Notes: generated by a model not told the origin, from the letters alone. Numbered from the stretch's first letter, positions 34,379 to 43,112 are shown. The stretch: 64,000 bases of DNA from Ylistrum balloti (GCF_031769215.1 NW_026782064.1:310001-374000), one strand, 5' to 3'. Program-made: numbers and translations.

Positions 34379-34450
34379 ATGAGTGTGCATTCGGAACCAG
34401 GTATGAGATCTCTCCGCACTAGAACATTGACATTACCAGCTTTGGATATG
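34379..34450 (+). pseudogene. N-terminal 24 codons of BEL gag, separated from the rest by the hAT insertion
   Basis: MSVHSEPGMRSLRTRTLTLPALDM joins in frame to YHDKVKTYYEK at 37498 when 34451-37497 is removed. Confidence 0.88.
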
Positions 34451-37400
34451 CAGTGTTCCCACTCACTTTTCAAACTGGGGGTATTCATACCCCACCTTCC
34501 AAAAACTGGGGGTATGAAGTTAAAAAGTGGGGGTATGATTGATGTTATAGGTATATAGGGTCAAATTCCATGTTTCTTTTCAGTTCATATTAGTTAATGT
34601 GTTCTTTATGGAATATGAGGATGAGTATGTTTGATTTATTGTTCTGATTTTATTGTTTCACTGAAAATAAAATAAAATACAAATATCACTGAATGAAATG
34701 TTTTTTTTTTATTATCATCGATCCAATGGCATCAAACTGTTTTTGTTATAATACTGTTGTAAACGTTTTTCTTGGAAACATACTATGTAGCACTTGTATT
34801 AATAACAAGGCCAATGATAAGTAACATTAAAGGTTTTACAACACAGAGTTGAGACAGTACTAGCGAAATATTGCTTTTACAATATTTTGTCACAAGCTCG
34901 GTGGACAATTTCCTCTGGATCAAAGTCATCTTTGTTTGAATAATATCCAATGACCATTCTGTCCTCAACAGTAGAAACACTTCTTTTATTTGTCGAGGCA
35001 GAATGGTGACGGTTTTGGAGTGAAAATCCCCTTTCACAGGGGACTGAAGTTAATGGCACAGTCATGAATATACCAGCTAGAACACAAAAGTCTGGAAATT
35101 CCTCAGTGTAGTCATTTGTGATCTTTAAACACATGTCTGTTACCTCAAAATGTCTGTTAACATTTAGCAAAAATTTGAACTGCAGATACTCATCTCTGGT
35201 TCTATTAGGATCAATGAGATTGTCACCTTCACCCCCTCCATATTTCTCTATCACTCTCTCAAGGGATTCTGTGCCATGGTTAACAATACCTGCATGGTTC
35301 ACTGGCAGTATTTTCGGATTAAGAACATCATTCAGGTCTTTCAAGTCCCTCATATTGTCTTCTGGAAAGCGTTCATTAAATTCTGACACCAAGTTTCTGA
35401 CAAAAGCTCGCTTAACATCTCTGAATACAATCCTATCCCTAATAGAACATGTAAGTGGAATCCCTTTGTACTCATCAGATTCCTCAATAGTGTCTAACAA
35501 ATCAACTACAGTTGGAGGGTCAGTATGGTAAAAAGATTGTATGGTATCTCGAGCTGAGATAACCATAGATGTGACCTGCTGAATATCAATAATGTCTCTC
35601 TGGAATGTTCTGGATAATTTACAAAATATGTTCTGTATATCCTTCAATAGACATAATACTGAAATGAATTTGAATGTCTTGATGTCTCTCCCTATCCCTT
35701 TTGCTTTTGCTCCACCCTCAGTTCTGGGAGCATTGGCGGCTTCATGTTCCATTCCTAAGATGAGTACAGACCAGTTTTCATAGACTGCAATTATTGCATC
35801 TTGTAGTGATAACCACCGAACCTCTGTTGGTTTTTTAAACTTCTTAACCTTTTCTTTCATGATTTTTTTCAATTCCCAAAGTTTGTTATAACGTGGAGCT
35901 GAAAATTCATAATAATAATAAATTGCTATTAACAGCTCCTGTACTTTTCTTAAGTATGGAACTTTCTTAGCAGCCCAATGTGCCACCAAAGACAACCTAT
36001 GTGCTGCACACCATACATGAATTATGTGAGGATTCTGTGCCCTTAACTTCACTCCAACACCTGAAAGTCTACCAGTCATCACTGCTGCTCCGTCACTTCC
36101 AAATCCAGAAATGTTCTTGAAGCTAATGCCAACATCGTCCATCCAATTTACAATAGCATTATATATTGTATCTGCTTTTCCATCACTTACAGTTACATTT
36201 GCACAGAACTCTATTTTGATTTGACCAGCATGTACAATTTTACAAAACATAATAAGTTTTTTATTTGTGGCAATATCCATGGATTCATCTACCATAAGAC
36301 CAACAAATGGACTATCTCTCACTCGGACAATGGTCAATTCTCTCAACACGTCTGCCAGTGCTCTTTGCATATCACTAGGTGCCTGATGATTTGTATAAAT
36401 CCCACTTGATGAAGTTGAACTCCTTCCCGCGGAACTCTTTTGAAATACTGTTGATCCATTTGAAATCTGATTAAAAAATGAAATAATAAATTACTGGTAG
36501 TGGTATTCTTTAGTTTGTTTTATTCATAGATCATTTTAAAATGTTAATGTTAAATGACATGAATTTATTTTTAATTATTTACTATTAACTAGTTAAAATT
36601 TGTTATTTATCCAAATTAAAACTAAGAATGAAATCCTAACAATTTGTTTAATAACATGTCTCCAGTATAGTCACGTGTACAATGTATTTTGTGATTTTGT
36701 TTTTTATCCACATTGACAATATTCATAACAATGGTAATCCTTCCCACTGTTCTGACCATTAATCAAATTTCTTACACTAATGAAATAACCACCTGCAGAT
36801 CTACTAAGCTTATAAACTTGCGGTTAGCAATGTTCTCCTTGGCCAGCCACAGTGCCGTCTTCAGTTGAGCCTCGAGTATACGCTGATAATTCTTTTTCAA
36901 GCATGTTTTGGCAGCGTTCATGTACACCTTTTGTCGTTTTGTCTGAATCGATAGTAGATGATCTTTTGACTGCTGATGTCGCACAAGCGCTGATCTCTGA
37001 AAATTTTTGGTTCCTTTACAAAACGGCGAAAATTTACAGTGCGGCATTTCCTTACATAGGGAACAGAACATACCGGAATCTTCTTTTCTCAGCCAATCGA
37101 ATTCTAACAGCCATTTCTGTTGAAAAGTTTTTGGATATTGTGCCGATGATGTTTTAGTATGTTTTCTTGTTTCAGACGAGCTGTCTATTTCATCATCATC
37201 TCTACTTTTTCGTTTGTTTCTGCTAACAGCAGACGATTCCCAAAAGCTATTGAGTGTCACCTGCGCCATTTTGTGTATACATCTATGCATTCGGGTATCT
37301 CGGTTCTAGGCATAATCCGCATAAAGCGGCCCGACACGTTCCGAAGGATTATCATAAGTCTGACGGGTTGAGGGGCAAGAATTAGTGATTCATAAATGTG

Positions 37401-37492
37401 CGTGAATATTACGTATATCTCTGTATTTTCTTACGTGGGAATTTACATTTTAAACGTGAATTACGTACATATGTGCGTGAATGGGAACACTG
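34451..37492 (-). mobile_element. hAT-superfamily DNA transposon (hAT5-like, 5-bp TSD), 3042 bp
   Basis: TIRs cagtgttcccactcac (34451-34466) and gtgaatgggaacactg (37477-37492), 15/16 match; TSD ATATG at 34446-34450 and 37493-37497; encodes a ZNF862-like hAT transposase. Confidence 0.93.
34877..37269 (-). CDS. Two-exon hAT transposase (ZNF862/DUF4371-type with N-terminal zinc finger), about 689 aa; exons 37269-36793 and 36466-34877
   Basis: Phase-0 intron CAG|GTGGTT ... TTTTTTAATCAG|ATT. Motifs: W..EF.WL and CSLC...H zinc finger, LMVDESMD, GSDGAAVM, CAAH, RW and SVPCERGFS. No internal stops or frameshifts. Confidence 0.9.
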
Positions 37493-37497
37493 ATATG

Positions 37498-40400
37498 TAT
37501 CACGATAAGGTTAAAACATACTATGAGAAGTTAAACGATATCAAGAATGAGCTAAGGTCACTGCCAGACGACATAGAGGGAGGAAAAAATGACAAAGATA
37601 CTTTACTAGCTCTCGATAAACTAGTTTCATGTGTCGAAGTATCATACTTCAAAAGCGCCGATATATTTCGCGACTTCTTACGGAAAACCAGATCAGTTGA
37701 AAGTGTAAATGAACTCACGCAACTAGATACAGAAAGAAACTTGTTCTTTGCAAAATCAAACGCAATACGAAAAACAATAAAAACATATGTACAGCAGTTA
37801 GAGCTTGATATTTCCGAGAGTGAGTGTACTTCACAGTCGGGTTCTGCATCTCACCATTCCGGGTCTCGCCATTCCTCACAAAGAACTGCCGATAGTTCAA
37901 TATTGCGCAGGAAAGAAGCTAAACTTGAAGCCCAGCGTGTACGATTGCAACATTTGGAGGAAGAATTGGCTTTAAAAGCTCAACTAAAGCAGTTGCGAGC
38001 AAAGCGTGATTTAGAAATGATTGAAAGAGAAGTGAATGTACTCAAGGAACCTCCGTATTCAATATTTAGCGAAGTTGCGAGTAGGGTAAACAGTGCAGAA
38101 CGTACCCGAGATTATGTGGAGAACTTGCCGCAAAGCTCTGCTGTAGGACCGGAAACTGCAGACCCCATAATTTCTACTCTTGACCCTGCAATCCCCCCCT
38201 TTGTGCCTAAAGCTCCGACACGGGCTGATACCCAGAGTGGAATCGTCGACACATTCACAAAACATCTCGTAAAACGAGAACTGATTACGACAAGGTTGGC
38301 CAAGTATGACGATGACCCTATGAGGTTTCTCTCCTGGAAAATTAGTTTTCAAGGGATAATGAAAGATGTGGAGGCTACCAAGACCGAGGAGTTAGAATTA
38401 TTGTGCGAATTTTGGGTCCAGAATCTTCCATACAAGCGAAGAAGATACAAGGTTATGGCGTGCATGATCCAGATCTAGCATGCAAGAAAATCTGGGAGAG
38501 ACTTGAAAGGCGCTATGGTGCACCGGAAATGGTTGAAGCTCGTCTTCACAGCAGAAACTGTCGACAAATATCGTCTTCTGTATGATCTGACCGACTTGGC
38601 TATGGAAATCTCTTCTATCAACCGCAGTTTGGAGCGTTATTCGCGTATGTCCACTCCAAAAAGGGCGTGAATGAACTTGTCGAGAAGTTACCTTGGAATG
38701 TCAAGGAGAAATGGACCTCTGCAGCTACACGCTATAAGCAACAGAAAAATGTTCTGTATCCTCCATTTGAGTTCTTCGTCAAGTTTATTGAGAATATGGC
38801 TAGCATGGGGAACGACCCTGCCTTTCAGTTTGAATCCAAGGCTCCTCGACAAAATAATCCGAATTCGAAGTCGCCATCCTCTACAAAGCGAAACGTAACC
38901 GTTATGAAGGTCAATGCCCAAGAATGGCCTGAGGACTCTGAAATCTGTCCGCTTCACAAGAACGGTAAGCACGTCCTCAACGAATGTAAACCGTTTAGAC
39001 AAAAGTCTATCGACGAACTGAAAAAGATCATACTCTTGAGTGGTATATGTTTCCGTTGTTGTTCTGGAAAGAAACATCGAGCGAGAAATTGTAAGACCCA
39101 AGTGAAGTGTAACATCTGTCAAGCTGCAACTCATCCTACTGCTCTGCATGAAGAGAAAGGCTTAAGTTCTTCCCAGGTCTTCAATCCCAATACTTCATCA
39201 GGTTCTCAAAACTACGAAGGGGAGAGAAAGCCTGCAGAGACTGCTACATCAATGTGCGCTCAAATCACCGGCGTATGCAAATCATGCGCCAAAATAATTC
39301 CAGTGCGTGTATTTCGCGAGTCCATTCCCGAAGAATCCGTCATCGTTTACGCGACTATCGATGACCAAAGTAATCAGTCGTTAGGAACGTCGGTATTATT
39401 CAACCGTTTCAATGAGTCCTGCAAAGATATTCCCTACACTCTAGTGTCTTGTTCCGGCGCAGTCGCTGCTGCGGGCAGGATGTGCACTGGCTATAAGGTT
39501 CAATCTCTCGACGGAAGTTGCGAACTTGCTATTCCTAGTCTGTTGGAATGCAACAACATTCCTAGTAGCAGGGATGAGATTCCATCTCCCGAGGTAGCTA
39601 TCTGAGACACGTAGCACCGCTTATTCCGCATGTCATTGAAGATGATGACATGGAGCTCCTTCTTGGCAGGGACGTTATTCGTGCCCACGTTGTTGAGGAC
39701 CAGATATTGGGAGAAGAGGATCAGCCTTTTGCTCAGAAGCTACCGTTAGGATGGGTGATTGTCGGACAAGTTTGTTTTGGTGGAGCACATATTTCTGAAG
39801 TCCGAACTATGAAAAGCTACATACTAGGAAATGGTAGACATTCTAGGTTTTCACCATGCGAAAACGAGCTTTCCGTGCAAAGAGATTTGTTTGAGAAGAC
39901 TGATCAGGACGAGAGAATAGGTTTGTCGGCAGAGGATCGTACCTTTTTTGAGGTTATGGAACAATCATTTGCGAAAGATGAGAATGGCCGTTGGGAAGCG
40001 CCTTTTCCATTCAAGAAGGATAGGACGCGATTATCGAATAACAAATGTCAAGCACTCAGACGAGCTAGATCCTTCGATCGTTGTTTGCATCATAACGAGC
40101 AAAAATGTGCCCACGTGAAGGACTTTATGAAAACATTGTTCGCCAGAGGTCACGCAGAAAAGGCTCCCGATTTACCCGATGACGCAGAATGTTGGTTCCT
40201 CCCTTTGTTCGGGGTCTACCATTCTAAAAAACCGAGTTCCATAAGGGTCGTATTTGATTCCTCTGCCCAGCACGAAGGGATATCCCTTAACGATGTGATG
40301 ATTAAGGGTCCTGATTTCGCCAACAACTTGCAGGGTATATTGATGAGATTCCGCCAAGAGGAAATCGCGGTTGTGGCTGACGTGGAACAAATGTTCCACA

Positions 40401-43112
40401 ACTTTCGAGTTGTTGAACCTCACCGCGATTACCTCCGTTTTTTTCTGGCACACGAACAATGACTTGGATTCTCCCTTGAAGGTGTTTAGGATAACGGTAC
40501 ACGTGTTTGGAAACCGAACCTCTCCCGCGGTTGCGAACTATGGCCTTCGTAAGTCGGTGTCATCTGCTGATCCGGATGTGCAGAGGTTTGTGTCGGACAA
40601 TTTTTATGTGGATGACGGAATGATGAGTTTTCCGAGCGTTGAAAGGGCTGTTAGTTTGGTACAGAGAACGCAGACAGCGTTGTACGATGGCGGAAGATTG
40701 AGGCTCCATAAGATCGCTTCCAATTCGACGGAGGTATTGGAACTGTTCCCCAAAGAGGATTTAGCGAAAGATCTTAAAGATCTAGATCTAGGTCAAGACT
40801 GCTTACCTGAACAGAGGAGTTTGGGGATTTGCTGGGATATTGTTTCCGACCGTTTCTTGTTTCGCGCAGACAAAGACCTGAAACCATTTACGCGTAGAGG
40901 CGTGTTATCCGTGATTAACAGTCTATTCGATCCTATTAGTTTTACGGCTCCCGTGACAGTCGAAGGAAGGATACTCATGCGGGAGGCCATGTCGTCAAAG
41001 TGTGGCTGGGACGAGTTGCTTCCGTAAACGTTGAGGATCCATTGGGAAAGGTGGGTTGACGAACTTGTTCACCTTCAGGACTTCACCATTCCACGTATGC
41101 ACTGTTCGTTGTCTGTGGAGATGTCATCGCGTGTTGAAGTTCATGTATTTTCCGACGCATCGAAAGAGGCTGTTGCCGCAGTGGCATTTATCAAAGTGTT
41201 TTCTGAAGACTCTAGTGAGATTGGGTTTCTTACCGGGAAGGCGAAGGTGGCACCTGCACATGGCCACACGATACCGAGATTAGAACTGTGTGCTTCGCTT
41301 CTCGCGGTCGACATTGCAGAGAATATTAGAGAGCAACTCGATGTACCCAAAGACATGTTTACATTCTACACGGACAGCCGCGTTGTGTTGGGCTATATTT
41401 CGAATGAATCCAAAAGGTTTCACGTGTATGTCGCGAATCGGGTGAGCAGAATCCGATCCTTTTGTGGACCTCATTCCTGGAAATACGTCGCATCGAGTGA
41501 AAATCCCGCCGATATAGCTACTCGCGGTTGTAGCGCTTTCGAACTTCCGAATAGCCTGTGGATTAATGGCCCTTCTTTTCTTCGCAAGGGTCAAGACATC
41601 GGTGACGCGTCGTTTACTTGGTTGTGAACGTTTCGAACGGTTCTCAATGTGGACAAGCTTAGTGCGAGCGATAATGTTCTTGAAACGGGTGATAAGGAAA
41701 CGGAAATCTTGCGATGTAAACGCCGTTGAACTCAGAGCTGAAGCAGAGCGTTTCATCATTCGGCAAGCACAACAAGAGGCTTTCGCAGCAGAGATTAGCG
41801 CAATCAGTACCGGAAAGAGTCCCCCGAGAGATAGTTCTTTGTCGACACTTTGTCCCATCTTGGATCCAGAAGGCATTTTACGTGTAAATGGACGTCTCAG
41901 ACAGATGAGAGTAAATGACGATAATCCTTCTTTGCGTAACCACCCTATTGTCATTCCTAAGGGACATCATGTTGGGAAACTGCTTACGCGACAGTATCAC
42001 GCTGAAGTTCACCATCAGGGGAGGCACCTTACGGAAGGTGCGCTCCGTTCTGCAGGTTATTGGGTTGTTGGTGGACGTCGCTTACTCAATTCCGTTATTC
42101 ATTCTTGCGTTACATGCAGGAGGTTGCGAGGCAAGTTTGGATGGACACATATGGCACAACTTCCTCCGGATAAAGTGGAATCTTGCCCGCCATTTTCCTT
42201 CGTAGGAGTGGATGTTTTTGGCCACTGGCCAGTTGTCGTGAAAAGATCACTTCGTGGAAGTACTACCAGCGCTAAACGCTGGGGCGTTCTATTCACCTGT
42301 CTTGTGTCTAGAGGTGTACATATAGAAGAGATGAGTAGTTGTCAGTTTATCAACGCCCTTCGCAGATTTACCGCTATTATGGTCCTGTGCGTCAGTTTAG
42401 GTCCGACCGCGGATCTAATTTTGTTGGTGCCGTTAAAGAGTTGGGCATCAGTGCTTCATTCATCGAGGACCGACCGATCCAGGAATTTCTCGAGAACGCT
42501 GGCAGTTCTTGGTTGTTTAATCCGCCGTACGCACACCATTTTGGAGGAGCCTGGGAGCGGATGGTGGGTTCATGTCGGCGTATATTGGACGGTCTTCTGT
42601 TGGAGAACAAGTCGAAGGATTTGATGCATGATACACTTGCAACGTTTATGGCAGAGGTGTCCGCCATCATGAACTCACGACCGTTGTTGCCAGTATCTAC
42701 GGATCCAGAGTCGATTCTTTCGCCGTCGCTTATTCTTACTCAGAAACCTCAGGATAGCGTTTCACCCCTCGACCTAACAGGTTTTGGTTCGAAGGATGCT
42801 CTAAGGAGTCAGTGGAAATTCGTGCAACGTATGGCCGACGAATTCTGGCGTCGTTGGAAACGGGACTATCTTCATCATTTGCAAGTTTGTCAAAAATGGT
42901 AAGGGCGTGGAGTTTCCTTCAAAAAGAATGACATTGTGTTGATGAGGGATGACACCAATCGCAATAATTGGCCGATTGGAATAGTTGAGGAAGTCTATCC
43001 GAGTAAAGACTCCGTAGTACGAAAAGTGAAACTGTCAGTTGTTCGTGGAGATACTCGTGTATCATATGTTCGACCTATTTCGGGACTTGTTCGATTAGTT
43101 GCTTTCGAATGA
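37498..43112 (+). pseudogene. BEL/Pao gag-pol, disrupted
   Basis: Domains are spread over ORFs 37396-38478, 38667-39605, 39650-40462, 40371-41027, 41031-41627, 41566-42624 and 42339-42902, plus a C-terminal tail to TGA at 43110-43112; at least seven frameshifts or stops. Confidence 0.93.

What the first reader, a model, noticed from the sequence alone, without database searches (positions are those of the whole stretch)
34446..37497. Apparently autonomous hAT-like element with a non-canonical 5-bp TSD and intact spliced transposase
Seen: a perfect 5-bp TSD (ATATG) with no 8-bp match, 16-bp TIRs starting CAGTG, and a 689-codon two-exon ORF with all hAT catalytic motifs (DESMD, SDGA, CAAH, RW, CERGFS) and no lesions, inside a host element riddled with lesions. 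Established: canonical hATs make 8-bp TSDs, a minor hAT5 group is defined by 5-bp TSDs, and ZNF862-like genes are domesticated relatives of such transposases. Inference: a young, possibly active member of a poorly characterised hAT lineage, useful for studying what sets TSD length and as a candidate transgenesis tool for molluscs.
Basis: partly seen in the sequence, partly recalled or inferred. Interest (0 to 1): 0.7.

Follow-up and report, generated by a model that had tools for sequence, protein, structure and literature searches.

The report
Young hAT5 transposon in a scallop
This is a real, recently mobile cut-and-paste DNA transposon of the known hAT5 group (hAT elements that duplicate 5 bp rather than 8 bp of target). 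It sits inside a dead retrotransposon of a scallop genome, so it is a new family of a known kind, and this copy's transposase is open but carries suspicious amino-acid changes.

Summary
Window 34451-37492 is a 3042-bp element with 16-bp terminal inverted repeats (CAGTGTTCCCA[C/T]TCAC) and a 5-bp duplication, ATATG. A paralogous uninterrupted copy of the host repeat carries ATATG once, which fixes the ends to the base.

The genome, probably Ylistrum balloti, holds exactly 12 termini, meaning 7 copies. Two are full length, two are truncated or rearranged, and three are short deletion derivatives. Two of the derivatives share one deletion junction but lie at different sites.

- **Duplication length in this species:** 5 bp in five insertions, 6 bp in one and 9 bp in one.
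- **Duplication length in relatives:** Mercenaria, Haliotis and Branchiostoma relatives also make 5-bp duplications.
- **Polymorphism:** resequenced animals carry insertions and deletion forms that the assembly lacks.

The two-exon transposase has a zf-C17orf113 finger, DUF4371 and a hAT dimerisation domain. It folds like Hermes and keeps D, D, E, CxxH and RW. An intronless homologue supports the splice junction residue for residue.

Caveats:
- Only the window copy has open frames.
- Nine of its ten private coding changes are non-synonymous. One is L278Q at a position invariant in 24 homologues.
- No RNA data exist for this species in the runs on offer.

hAT5 has been described since 2007 and is already annotated in molluscs. 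The scan also noted a mini copy of this family elsewhere in the genome.

The parts
34446..34450 (.). Left copy of the 5-bp target-site duplication, ATATG
   Evidence: Read directly. The empty paralogous site on C117 carries it once.
34451..34466 (+). Terminal inverted repeat CAGTGTTCCCACTCAC, at the end 3' of the transposase gene
   Evidence: pair I3. The same terminus occurs in 5 further copies.
34470..34538 (+). Three subterminal direct repeats of about 17 nt with core ACTGGGGGTAT. Inferred to be transposase-binding motifs.
   Evidence: family D1. Copy C473b has lost 31 bp between two of these repeats. The binding role is inference.
34877..36466 (-). Transposase exon 2: 529 codons plus the stop at 34877-34879. 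It holds DUF4371, the RNase-H-like DDE core (D60, D125, E478), CxxH, RW and the hAT dimerisation domain.
   Evidence: Pfam; conservation; AlphaFold model pLDDT 88; Hermes is the top fold match; profile hit to Hermes in PDB, E 1e-12.
36467..36792 (-). 326-nt intron with GT..AG ends
   Evidence: Splice signals read. The last residue of exon 1 aligns to residue 167, and the first residue of exon 2 to residue 168, of the intronless homologue P0007. No RNA evidence.
36793..37290 (-). Transposase exon 1 with the zf-C17orf113 zinc finger. The likely start is the second ATG, at 37269.
   Evidence: Pfam PF25431, E 9.6e-14. The alignment to P0007 begins at its residue 3, opposite residue 9 here.
37396..37482 (+). 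Subterminal direct repeats at the 5' end: ATGTGCGTGAAT twice and ATTACGTAYAT twice
   Evidence: families D16 and D10. Any function is inferred.
37477..37492 (-). Terminal inverted repeat CAGTGTTCCCATTCAC, at the end 5' of the transposase gene
   Evidence: pair I3.
37493..37497 (.). Right copy of the target-site duplication, ATATG
37498..42902 (+). Host element: a decayed BEL/Pao LTR retrotransposon, with its gag-like frame interrupted by the insertion and pol in several frames. Its upstream part lies left of 34446.
   Evidence: Peptidase_A17 is split between ORFs 40371-41027 and 41031-41627, with Integrase_H2C2 and DUF5641 in further frames. A paralogue on C117 is 95-96% identical.

Best explanation
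Window 34451-37492 is one copy of a young, low-copy family of the hAT5 group of hAT DNA transposons, in a pectinid scallop genome (probably Ylistrum balloti).

Inferred mechanism, from the Hermes-like fold and conserved residues: the spliced mRNA encodes a protein of about 688 aa. An N-terminal zinc finger recognises the element ends and subterminal repeats. A DDE RNase-H-like core, interrupted by an alpha-helical insertion domain that carries the RW motif, cuts the element out. A C-terminal hAT domain builds the oligomer. The two freed 3'-OH ends attack the target 5 bp apart instead of 8, and repair gives the 5-bp duplication.

Shown here: the family transposed recently. Deletion derivatives were mobilised in trans, one of them to a second site 106 kb away. 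Insertion sites differ between individuals.

The window copy is the only one in this assembly with open transposase frames. It evolves like a neutral, decaying copy, so it may be impaired. I put about 0.3 on this copy encoding a fully active enzyme.
For: Ends and TSD:
- The empty paralogous site carries a single ATATG.
- The genome holds exactly 12 termini, against 0 for the reversed control pattern.
- 5-bp TSDs: GACAT, ACTAT and CTTCA, and ACATC, which has a reference empty site.

Transposase:
- Pfam finds zf-C17orf113, DUF4371 and Dimer_Tnp_hAT.
- D, D, E, CxxH and RW are invariant or nearly so across 25 relatives.
- The model has pLDDT 88, and its eleven best PDB matches are all Hermes chains, about 500-525 aligned columns, TM 0.50-0.65.
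- The profile hits Hermes across the catalytic-E region.
- The splice junction abuts residues 167 and 168 of an intronless homologue.

The 5-bp TSD is clade-wide:
- Mercenaria ATACT, Haliotis ACATG, Branchiostoma TACAG and TTATG.
- The TIRs are related: CAGTGTTCCC in the molluscs, CAGGGTTC in Branchiostoma.

Recent mobility:
- Each copy is 0-0.64% from the state the others share.
- Copies C473a and C473b have an identical deletion junction but different TSDs.
- Runs X1-X5 show insertions and deletion junctions that the assembly lacks.

Known group: hAT5 is defined by 5-bp TSDs.
Against: - TSD length is not uniform. One copy has a 6-bp duplication (CCCTAT). One polymorphic insertion has a 9-bp duplication (CCTATAAGG), checked against the reference empty site.
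- No RNA run was available, so transcription and splicing are unproven.
- The window copy has about 13 private substitutions. Of the ten in coding sequence, nine are non-synonymous, including L278Q (L in 24 of 24 homologues) and R197W (R or K in 21 of 24).
- None of these private letters appears in the contigs of four other animals.
- The other two coding copies are frameshifted.
- I could not place the protein in a tree with reference hAT5, hAT6, Blackjack, Buster, Ac or Tip sequences, because none was available.
Confidence: 0.88

Rival explanations
1. The family is extinct. The window copy is a dead copy whose frame has stayed open by chance, and the insertion differences between animals are old segregating polymorphisms rather than ongoing transposition.
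For: The private coding changes run 9 non-synonymous to 1 synonymous, and invariant L278 is replaced. All other coding copies are broken. Copies differ from the shared state by up to 0.6%. From general knowledge, that is within the allelic diversity usual for marine bivalves, so polymorphic insertions need not be recent.
Against: Copy C473a has no private substitution in 817 sites. Several insertion sites and two further deletion forms exist in only some of four animals. In X1, one 3036-nt contig lies along the element without any indel inside the coding region, though it may be a collapsed path through several copies.
Confidence: 0.45
2. It is a domesticated host gene (ZNF862, C17orf113 or KIAA1586-like, as NCBI names its relatives) that only looks like a transposon.
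For: Database names of the homologues. The open frame in the window copy.
Against: There are seven copies bounded by the same TIRs, with different flanks and TSDs. An empty site exists. Insertions are polymorphic. The element lies inside a dead retrotransposon. There is no sign of purifying selection.
Confidence: 0.02
3. The true ends are mis-called, and the element is a canonical 8-bp-TSD hAT or belongs to another 5-bp-TSD superfamily such as Transib or CACTA.
For: One insertion shows a 9-bp duplication and one a 6-bp duplication.
Against: The empty sites define the ends to the base. Similarity between the two Branchiostoma copies stops exactly at the TIRs. The protein is a Hermes-like hAT by Pfam, by profile and by fold.
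Confidence: 0.02

Closest known systems
hAT5 group of hAT transposons (Kapitonov & Jurka 2007, Repbase Reports 7:1188; reported in invertebrates including Nematostella (Putnam et al. 2007) and in fish; a Hydra Repbase entry, hAT-13_HM, is classed as hAT5; RepeatMasker class DNA/hAT-hAT5)
   Same: A hAT transposase combined with 5-bp target-site duplications, short TIRs and an animal host. hAT5 has also been reported in a mollusc, Lymnaea.
   Different: This is a new family in a scallop. I could not compare it with the reference hAT5 proteins. Here the TSD is occasionally 6 or 9 bp.
Hermes (Musca domestica hAT transposase; PDB 2BW3, 4D1Q, 6DWW, 8SJD)
   Same: Same overall fold over about 500 residues. 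Same catalytic D, D, E, the CxxH and RW motifs, and the C-terminal hAT domain.
   Different: About 15% sequence identity. Hermes makes 8-bp TSDs and has a BED finger. This protein has a zf-C17orf113 finger and a DUF4371-type N-terminal half of the core.
Vertebrate ZNF862, C17orf113 and KIAA1586-type genes (names NCBI gives the homologues)
   Same: Same domain set: zf-C17orf113, DUF4371, FAM200-ZBED5 RNase-like and hAT dimerisation.
   Different: Those are taken to be single-copy host genes. This is a multi-copy mobile element with TIRs and TSDs. The direct relationship was not tested, because no vertebrate reference genes were fetched.
Ac/Ds of maize (autonomous element plus internal-deletion derivatives, with transposition to linked sites)
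   Same: One coding element alongside short internal-deletion derivatives that keep both ends. Two copies of one derivative lie 106 kb apart on one contig.
   Different: A different hAT lineage, 8-bp TSDs and a plant host.

Membership tests
hAT superfamily | DDE RNase-H-like catalytic core with an inserted alpha-helical domain, Hermes-like fold | tested here: met
   The model has pLDDT 88. Its eleven best PDB matches are all Hermes chains, E down to 2e-11, about 500-525 aligned columns.
hAT superfamily | C-terminal hAT dimerisation domain (PF05699) carrying the catalytic E | tested here: met
   PF05699 scores 23.2 bits against a cutoff of 21.4. The profile aligns CERGFS with Hermes SERTFS. E478 is invariant.
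hAT superfamily | Conserved D, D, CxxH and RW motifs | tested here: met
   D60, C153, H156, R217 and W218 are invariant, and D125 is D in 23 of 24.
hAT superfamily | Short TIRs (about 10-25 bp), typically starting CAG or TAG | tested here: met
   16-nt TIRs starting CAGTG.
hAT superfamily (canonical) | 8-bp target-site duplication | tested here: not met
   TSDs are 5 bp in five insertions, 6 bp in one and 9 bp in one; none is 8 bp. The accepted subgroups hAT5, hAT6 and hAT7 are defined by exactly this departure.
hAT5 group | 5-bp target-site duplication made by a hAT transposase | tested here: met
   ATATG, GACAT, ACTAT, CTTCA and ACATC. Two of these are checked against empty sites. Relatives in three other species do the same.
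hAT5 group | Transposase clusters with the reference hAT5 proteins (Repbase or Dfam) in a hAT phylogeny | not testable with these tools
   No Repbase or Dfam sequences are available here. The only indirect support is that the DUF4371 and FAM200-ZBED5 RNase-like domains fit the animal Buster/Blackjack-side lineage in which Kojima 2025 places hAT5.
Autonomous (active) element | Uninterrupted transposase frame with catalytic residues | tested here: met
   This holds only for the window copy. C1081 has a 16-bp frameshifting deletion. C208 has a 1-nt insertion and lacks the 5' end.
Autonomous (active) element | No damaging substitutions; evidence of selection on the frame | tested here: not met
   Nine of ten private coding changes are non-synonymous. 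L278Q falls at an invariant position and R197W at an R/K position.
Autonomous (active) element | Transcribed and spliced mRNA | not testable with these tools
   No RNA run holds the sequence. The junction is supported only by homology.
Domesticated ZNF862/C17orf113-like gene | Single copy at a conserved locus, without TIRs or TSDs | tested here: not met
   Seven copies with TIRs and TSDs, an empty site, and polymorphic insertions.

The most novel reading that the evidence does not exclude
The whole animal clade of transposases built as zf-C17orf113 + DUF4371 + hAT (named ZNF862-, C17orf113- or KIAA1586-like in databases) is the hAT5 group, and the vertebrate host genes of those names are domesticated hAT5 transposases. 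The scallop family would still be mobile in living populations, with a target stagger that is mostly 5 bp but can slip to 6 or 9. That would make it a natural system for asking what fixes TSD length in hAT transpososomes.
Probability: 0.3. Interest if true: 0.55.

Novelty: new member of a known kind. Interest (0 to 1): 0.35.

Why it matters
To my knowledge no hAT5 transposase has been studied biochemically, so a near-intact, recently mobile family gives a concrete substrate for testing why this lineage spaces its two strand-transfer events 5 bp apart rather than 8. The substrate comes with defined ends, natural deletion derivatives and empty sites.

It also documents insertion polymorphism of a DNA transposon in a commercially fished scallop. 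It shows that proteins annotated as 'ZNF862-like', 'C17orf113-like' or 'KIAA1586-like' in mollusc and amphioxus genomes are transposon genes rather than host genes.

As biology it is expected. hAT5 has been known since 2007 and is routinely annotated.

Tried and rejected
- **RNA evidence.** The look-up of sequencing runs offered only DNA contig runs, so the junction could not be tested on transcripts.
- **Empty allele at this locus.** All four runs hold a contig that skips exactly 3047 bp (34444 to 37492). That contig shares its variant letters with the C117 paralogue. It therefore cannot be counted as an empty allele of this locus. I leave open whether the window insertion is polymorphic.
- **TIR/TSD scans around homologues.**
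  - Ptychodera (L037) and the fish Cololabis (L042) gave nothing convincing.
  - The ENA element L036 sits in a TA microsatellite, so its TSD cannot be read.
  - Glandiceps (L043) gave only an 8-kb candidate with a 7-bp duplication that I do not trust.
  - The Acropora protein was not on record.
- **Argopecten irradians relative.** It has the same TIR but an ambiguous TSD: TTTAT on one side and A+TTTAT on the other.
- **Phylogeny.** A tree with Ac, Buster, Tip, hAT19 and hAT5 references was not possible, because no reference sequences are reachable.
- **Joined protein.** All searches, the alignment and the fold used exon 2 or exon 1 alone.
- **Large protein search.** The large representative search was not used, because the family scans and the word search already settled the identity.
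- **Rejected readings.** Mis-called ends, a domesticated gene, and another superfamily with 5-bp TSDs.

Full report
**1. Is it there?**

Yes. The element occupies window 34451-37492 (3042 bp).

- Its ends are 16-nt inverted repeats, CAGTGTTCCCACTCAC and CAGTGTTCCCATTCAC, with 15 of 16 positions complementary (pair I3).
- ATATG stands immediately outside both ends, at 34446-34450 and 37493-37497. The flanking 8-mers do not match.
- The flanks belong to a repeat that has an uninterrupted paralogue on contig C117. There the left-flank and right-flank matches overlap by exactly five bases, and the sequence reads ...ctttgg ATATG tatcac....
- This empty site fixes both boundaries to the base and shows that 5 bp were duplicated.

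**2. The gene**

On the minus strand, exon 1 (37290, or the second ATG at 37269, down to 36793) ends in CAG|GT. Exon 2 (36466-34880, stop at 34879-34877) follows an AG.

- Exon 1 matches Pfam zf-C17orf113 (E 9.6e-14).
- Exon 2 matches DUF4371 and Dimer_Tnp_hAT.
Instead I compared each with P0007, a 689-aa homologue encoded without an intron.
- Exon 1 ends opposite its residue 167 and exon 2 starts opposite residue 168. The alignment of exon 1 starts at the second methionine.
- The predicted junction and the product of about 688 aa are therefore supported by homology. No RNA run was available.

In an alignment of exon 2 with 24 relatives, the first D (D60), C153 and H156, R217 and W218, and E478 are invariant. 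The second D (D125) is present in 23 of 24.

An AlphaFold model of exon 2 has mean pLDDT 88.1. Its eleven best PDB matches are all Hermes transposase chains, with about 500-525 aligned columns and TM 0.50-0.65. A sequence profile also reaches Hermes across the catalytic-E region.

**3. The family in this genome**

The best protein hit, P0001, is named for Ylistrum balloti. It is 100% identical to the translation of the C208 copy, so the genome is very probably that scallop.

A search for the terminus pattern finds exactly 12 sites and none for the reversed control. That makes seven copies:

| Copy | State |
|---|---|
| Window | Full length, open frames |
| C1081 | Full length, but with a 16-bp frameshifting deletion and a 6-bp deletion in exon 2 |
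| C208 | One inserted base in exon 2; cut off at element position 2833 |
| C1179 | Rearranged; one end only |
| C230 | Short derivative, 839 bp |
| C473a | Short derivative, 817 bp |
| C473b | Short derivative, 787 bp |

- A protein search of the genome finds no other close relative. The next hit is only 30% identical.
- Each copy differs from the state shared by the others at 0-0.64% of sites, a star-like pattern.
- C473a and C473b share an identical deletion junction (...cactgaaaa|TTTTCAAGC...). They lie 106 kb apart in opposite orientation and have different TSDs. A non-autonomous derivative was therefore mobilised in trans after the deletion arose.

**4. Target-site duplications**

In this assembly the TSDs are ATATG, GACAT, ACTAT and CTTCA (5 bp) and CCCTAT (6 bp).

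I laid the contigs of four resequenced animals on the region. They show element ends joined to flanks that the assembly lacks.

- One pair of flanks gives the TSD ACATC. The reference carries the corresponding empty site on C117 with ACATC once.
- Another pair carries CCTATAAGG on both sides, and the reference empty site on C150 has it once. That is a 9-bp duplication.

The rule is therefore 5 bp (five of seven insertions), with outliers I cannot explain.

The same runs also hold two deletion junctions absent from the assembly: 35377/36971 with filler CA, and 35502/36443 with filler AA.

All four runs contain a contig that skips the element exactly. It shares its variants with the C117 paralogue, so I do not count it as an empty allele of this locus.

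**5. Is 5 bp a property of the lineage?**

I fetched the loci of homologues and looked for TIRs with flanking duplications.

| Species | Protein identity | TIR | TSD |
|---|---|---|---|
| Mercenaria mercenaria | 58% | CAGAGTTCCCAC / CAGTGTTCCCAC | ATACT |
| Haliotis rubra | 34% | CAGTGTTCCCG | ACATG |
| Branchiostoma, two copies | 31% | CAGGGTTCTAGC | TACAG and TTATG |
| Argopecten irradians | 78% | Same as here | Ambiguous: TTTAT versus A+TTTAT |

For the two Branchiostoma copies, similarity ends exactly at the TIRs. Other loci were uninformative.

So the animal clade carrying zf-C17orf113 + DUF4371 + hAT domains generally makes 5-bp TSDs. Automatic annotation names its members ZNF862-like, C17orf113-like or KIAA1586-like.

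**6. Comparison with the known**

- The literature states that hATs with 5-bp TSDs were described and named hAT5 by Kapitonov and Jurka in 2007, and hAT6 for 6 bp (PMC12730594).
- The same paper places hAT5 and hAT6 within an animal lineage that includes Blackjack.
- hAT5 occurs in invertebrates and fish and is unusual in its 5-bp TSD (PMC9004415).
- hAT5 is a standard RepeatMasker class and has been reported as enriched in piRNA clusters of the snail Lymnaea (PMC6128900).

The element meets the operational definition of hAT5. Its placement among reference hAT5 proteins could not be tested here.

**7. Is this copy active?**

Its frames are open, and it is the only such copy. Compared with the state shared by the other two coding copies and by the contigs of four other animals, it has ten private coding substitutions, nine of them non-synonymous.

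- One is L278Q, where all 24 homologues have L.
- One is R197W, where 21 of 24 have R or K.
- A third, at exon-1 residue 137, replaces a P that P0007 also has.

This is what neutral decay looks like, so the open frame may be luck. I put roughly 0.3 on this copy encoding a fully active enzyme. I put roughly 0.55 on the family still being mobile somewhere in the population.

**8. Verdict**

It is a real, young hAT5-group element, not domesticated and not mis-bounded. It is a new family of a known kind. Its interest is moderate-to-low for novelty, and somewhat higher as a practical starting point for studying hAT5 transposition.

Noticed in passing
L006:1501-2317, L007:1313-2099, L005:1501-2339 (G000 C473 twice, C230): The short deletion derivatives keep an open N-terminal frame of 142 aa (both C473 copies) or 165 aa (C230). 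That frame contains the zinc finger but no catalytic domain. Such finger-only products could compete for the ends, as the KP repressor does for P elements. This is speculation.
   Followed up: partly
G000 C473:485335-486151 and C473:591352-592138: Two copies of the same deletion derivative lie 106 kb apart on one contig, in opposite orientation and with different TSDs. This is consistent with the short-range transposition known for Ac-type elements.
   Followed up: partly
G000 C473:485335-486151; G000 C150 near 932970; L038:2295-5826: TSD outliers: a perfect 6-bp duplication (CCCTAT), a 9-bp duplication (CCTATAAGG) in a non-reference insertion, and a 5+1 pattern in Argopecten. In the 6-bp and Argopecten cases the extra base lies next to the end that is 3' of the transposase gene.
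   Followed up: partly
G000 C158:677159, C706:744538, C759:405719, C238 (two sites), C472, C904, C1290, C325, C112:20601 and others: A different DUF4371-type hAT-like family, about 26% identical to this one, is present in at least ten copies. Their open frames of about 701 aa give near-identical scores, so it looks like another young family.
   Followed up: no
window 37498-42902 and the flank left of 34446; paralogue at G000 C117:586344-587071: The host is a frame-broken BEL/Pao retrotransposon (Peptidase_A17, integrase and DUF5641 in different frames). The hAT5 element sits in its gag-like frame.
   Followed up: partly
protein P0118: A 361-aa relative, 30% identical, is filed under a bacterial MAG, 'Candidatus Thiodiazotropha sp.'. 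By general knowledge that genus comprises bivalve gill symbionts, so this is probably host DNA binned into the MAG.
   Followed up: no
L043:2085-10106 (Glandiceps talaboti): The hemichordate homologue lies inside an 8-kb stretch bounded by CATAGACCC inverted repeats with a 7-bp duplication (ATCACTT). This may be a different element carrying it, or a chance match.
   Followed up: no
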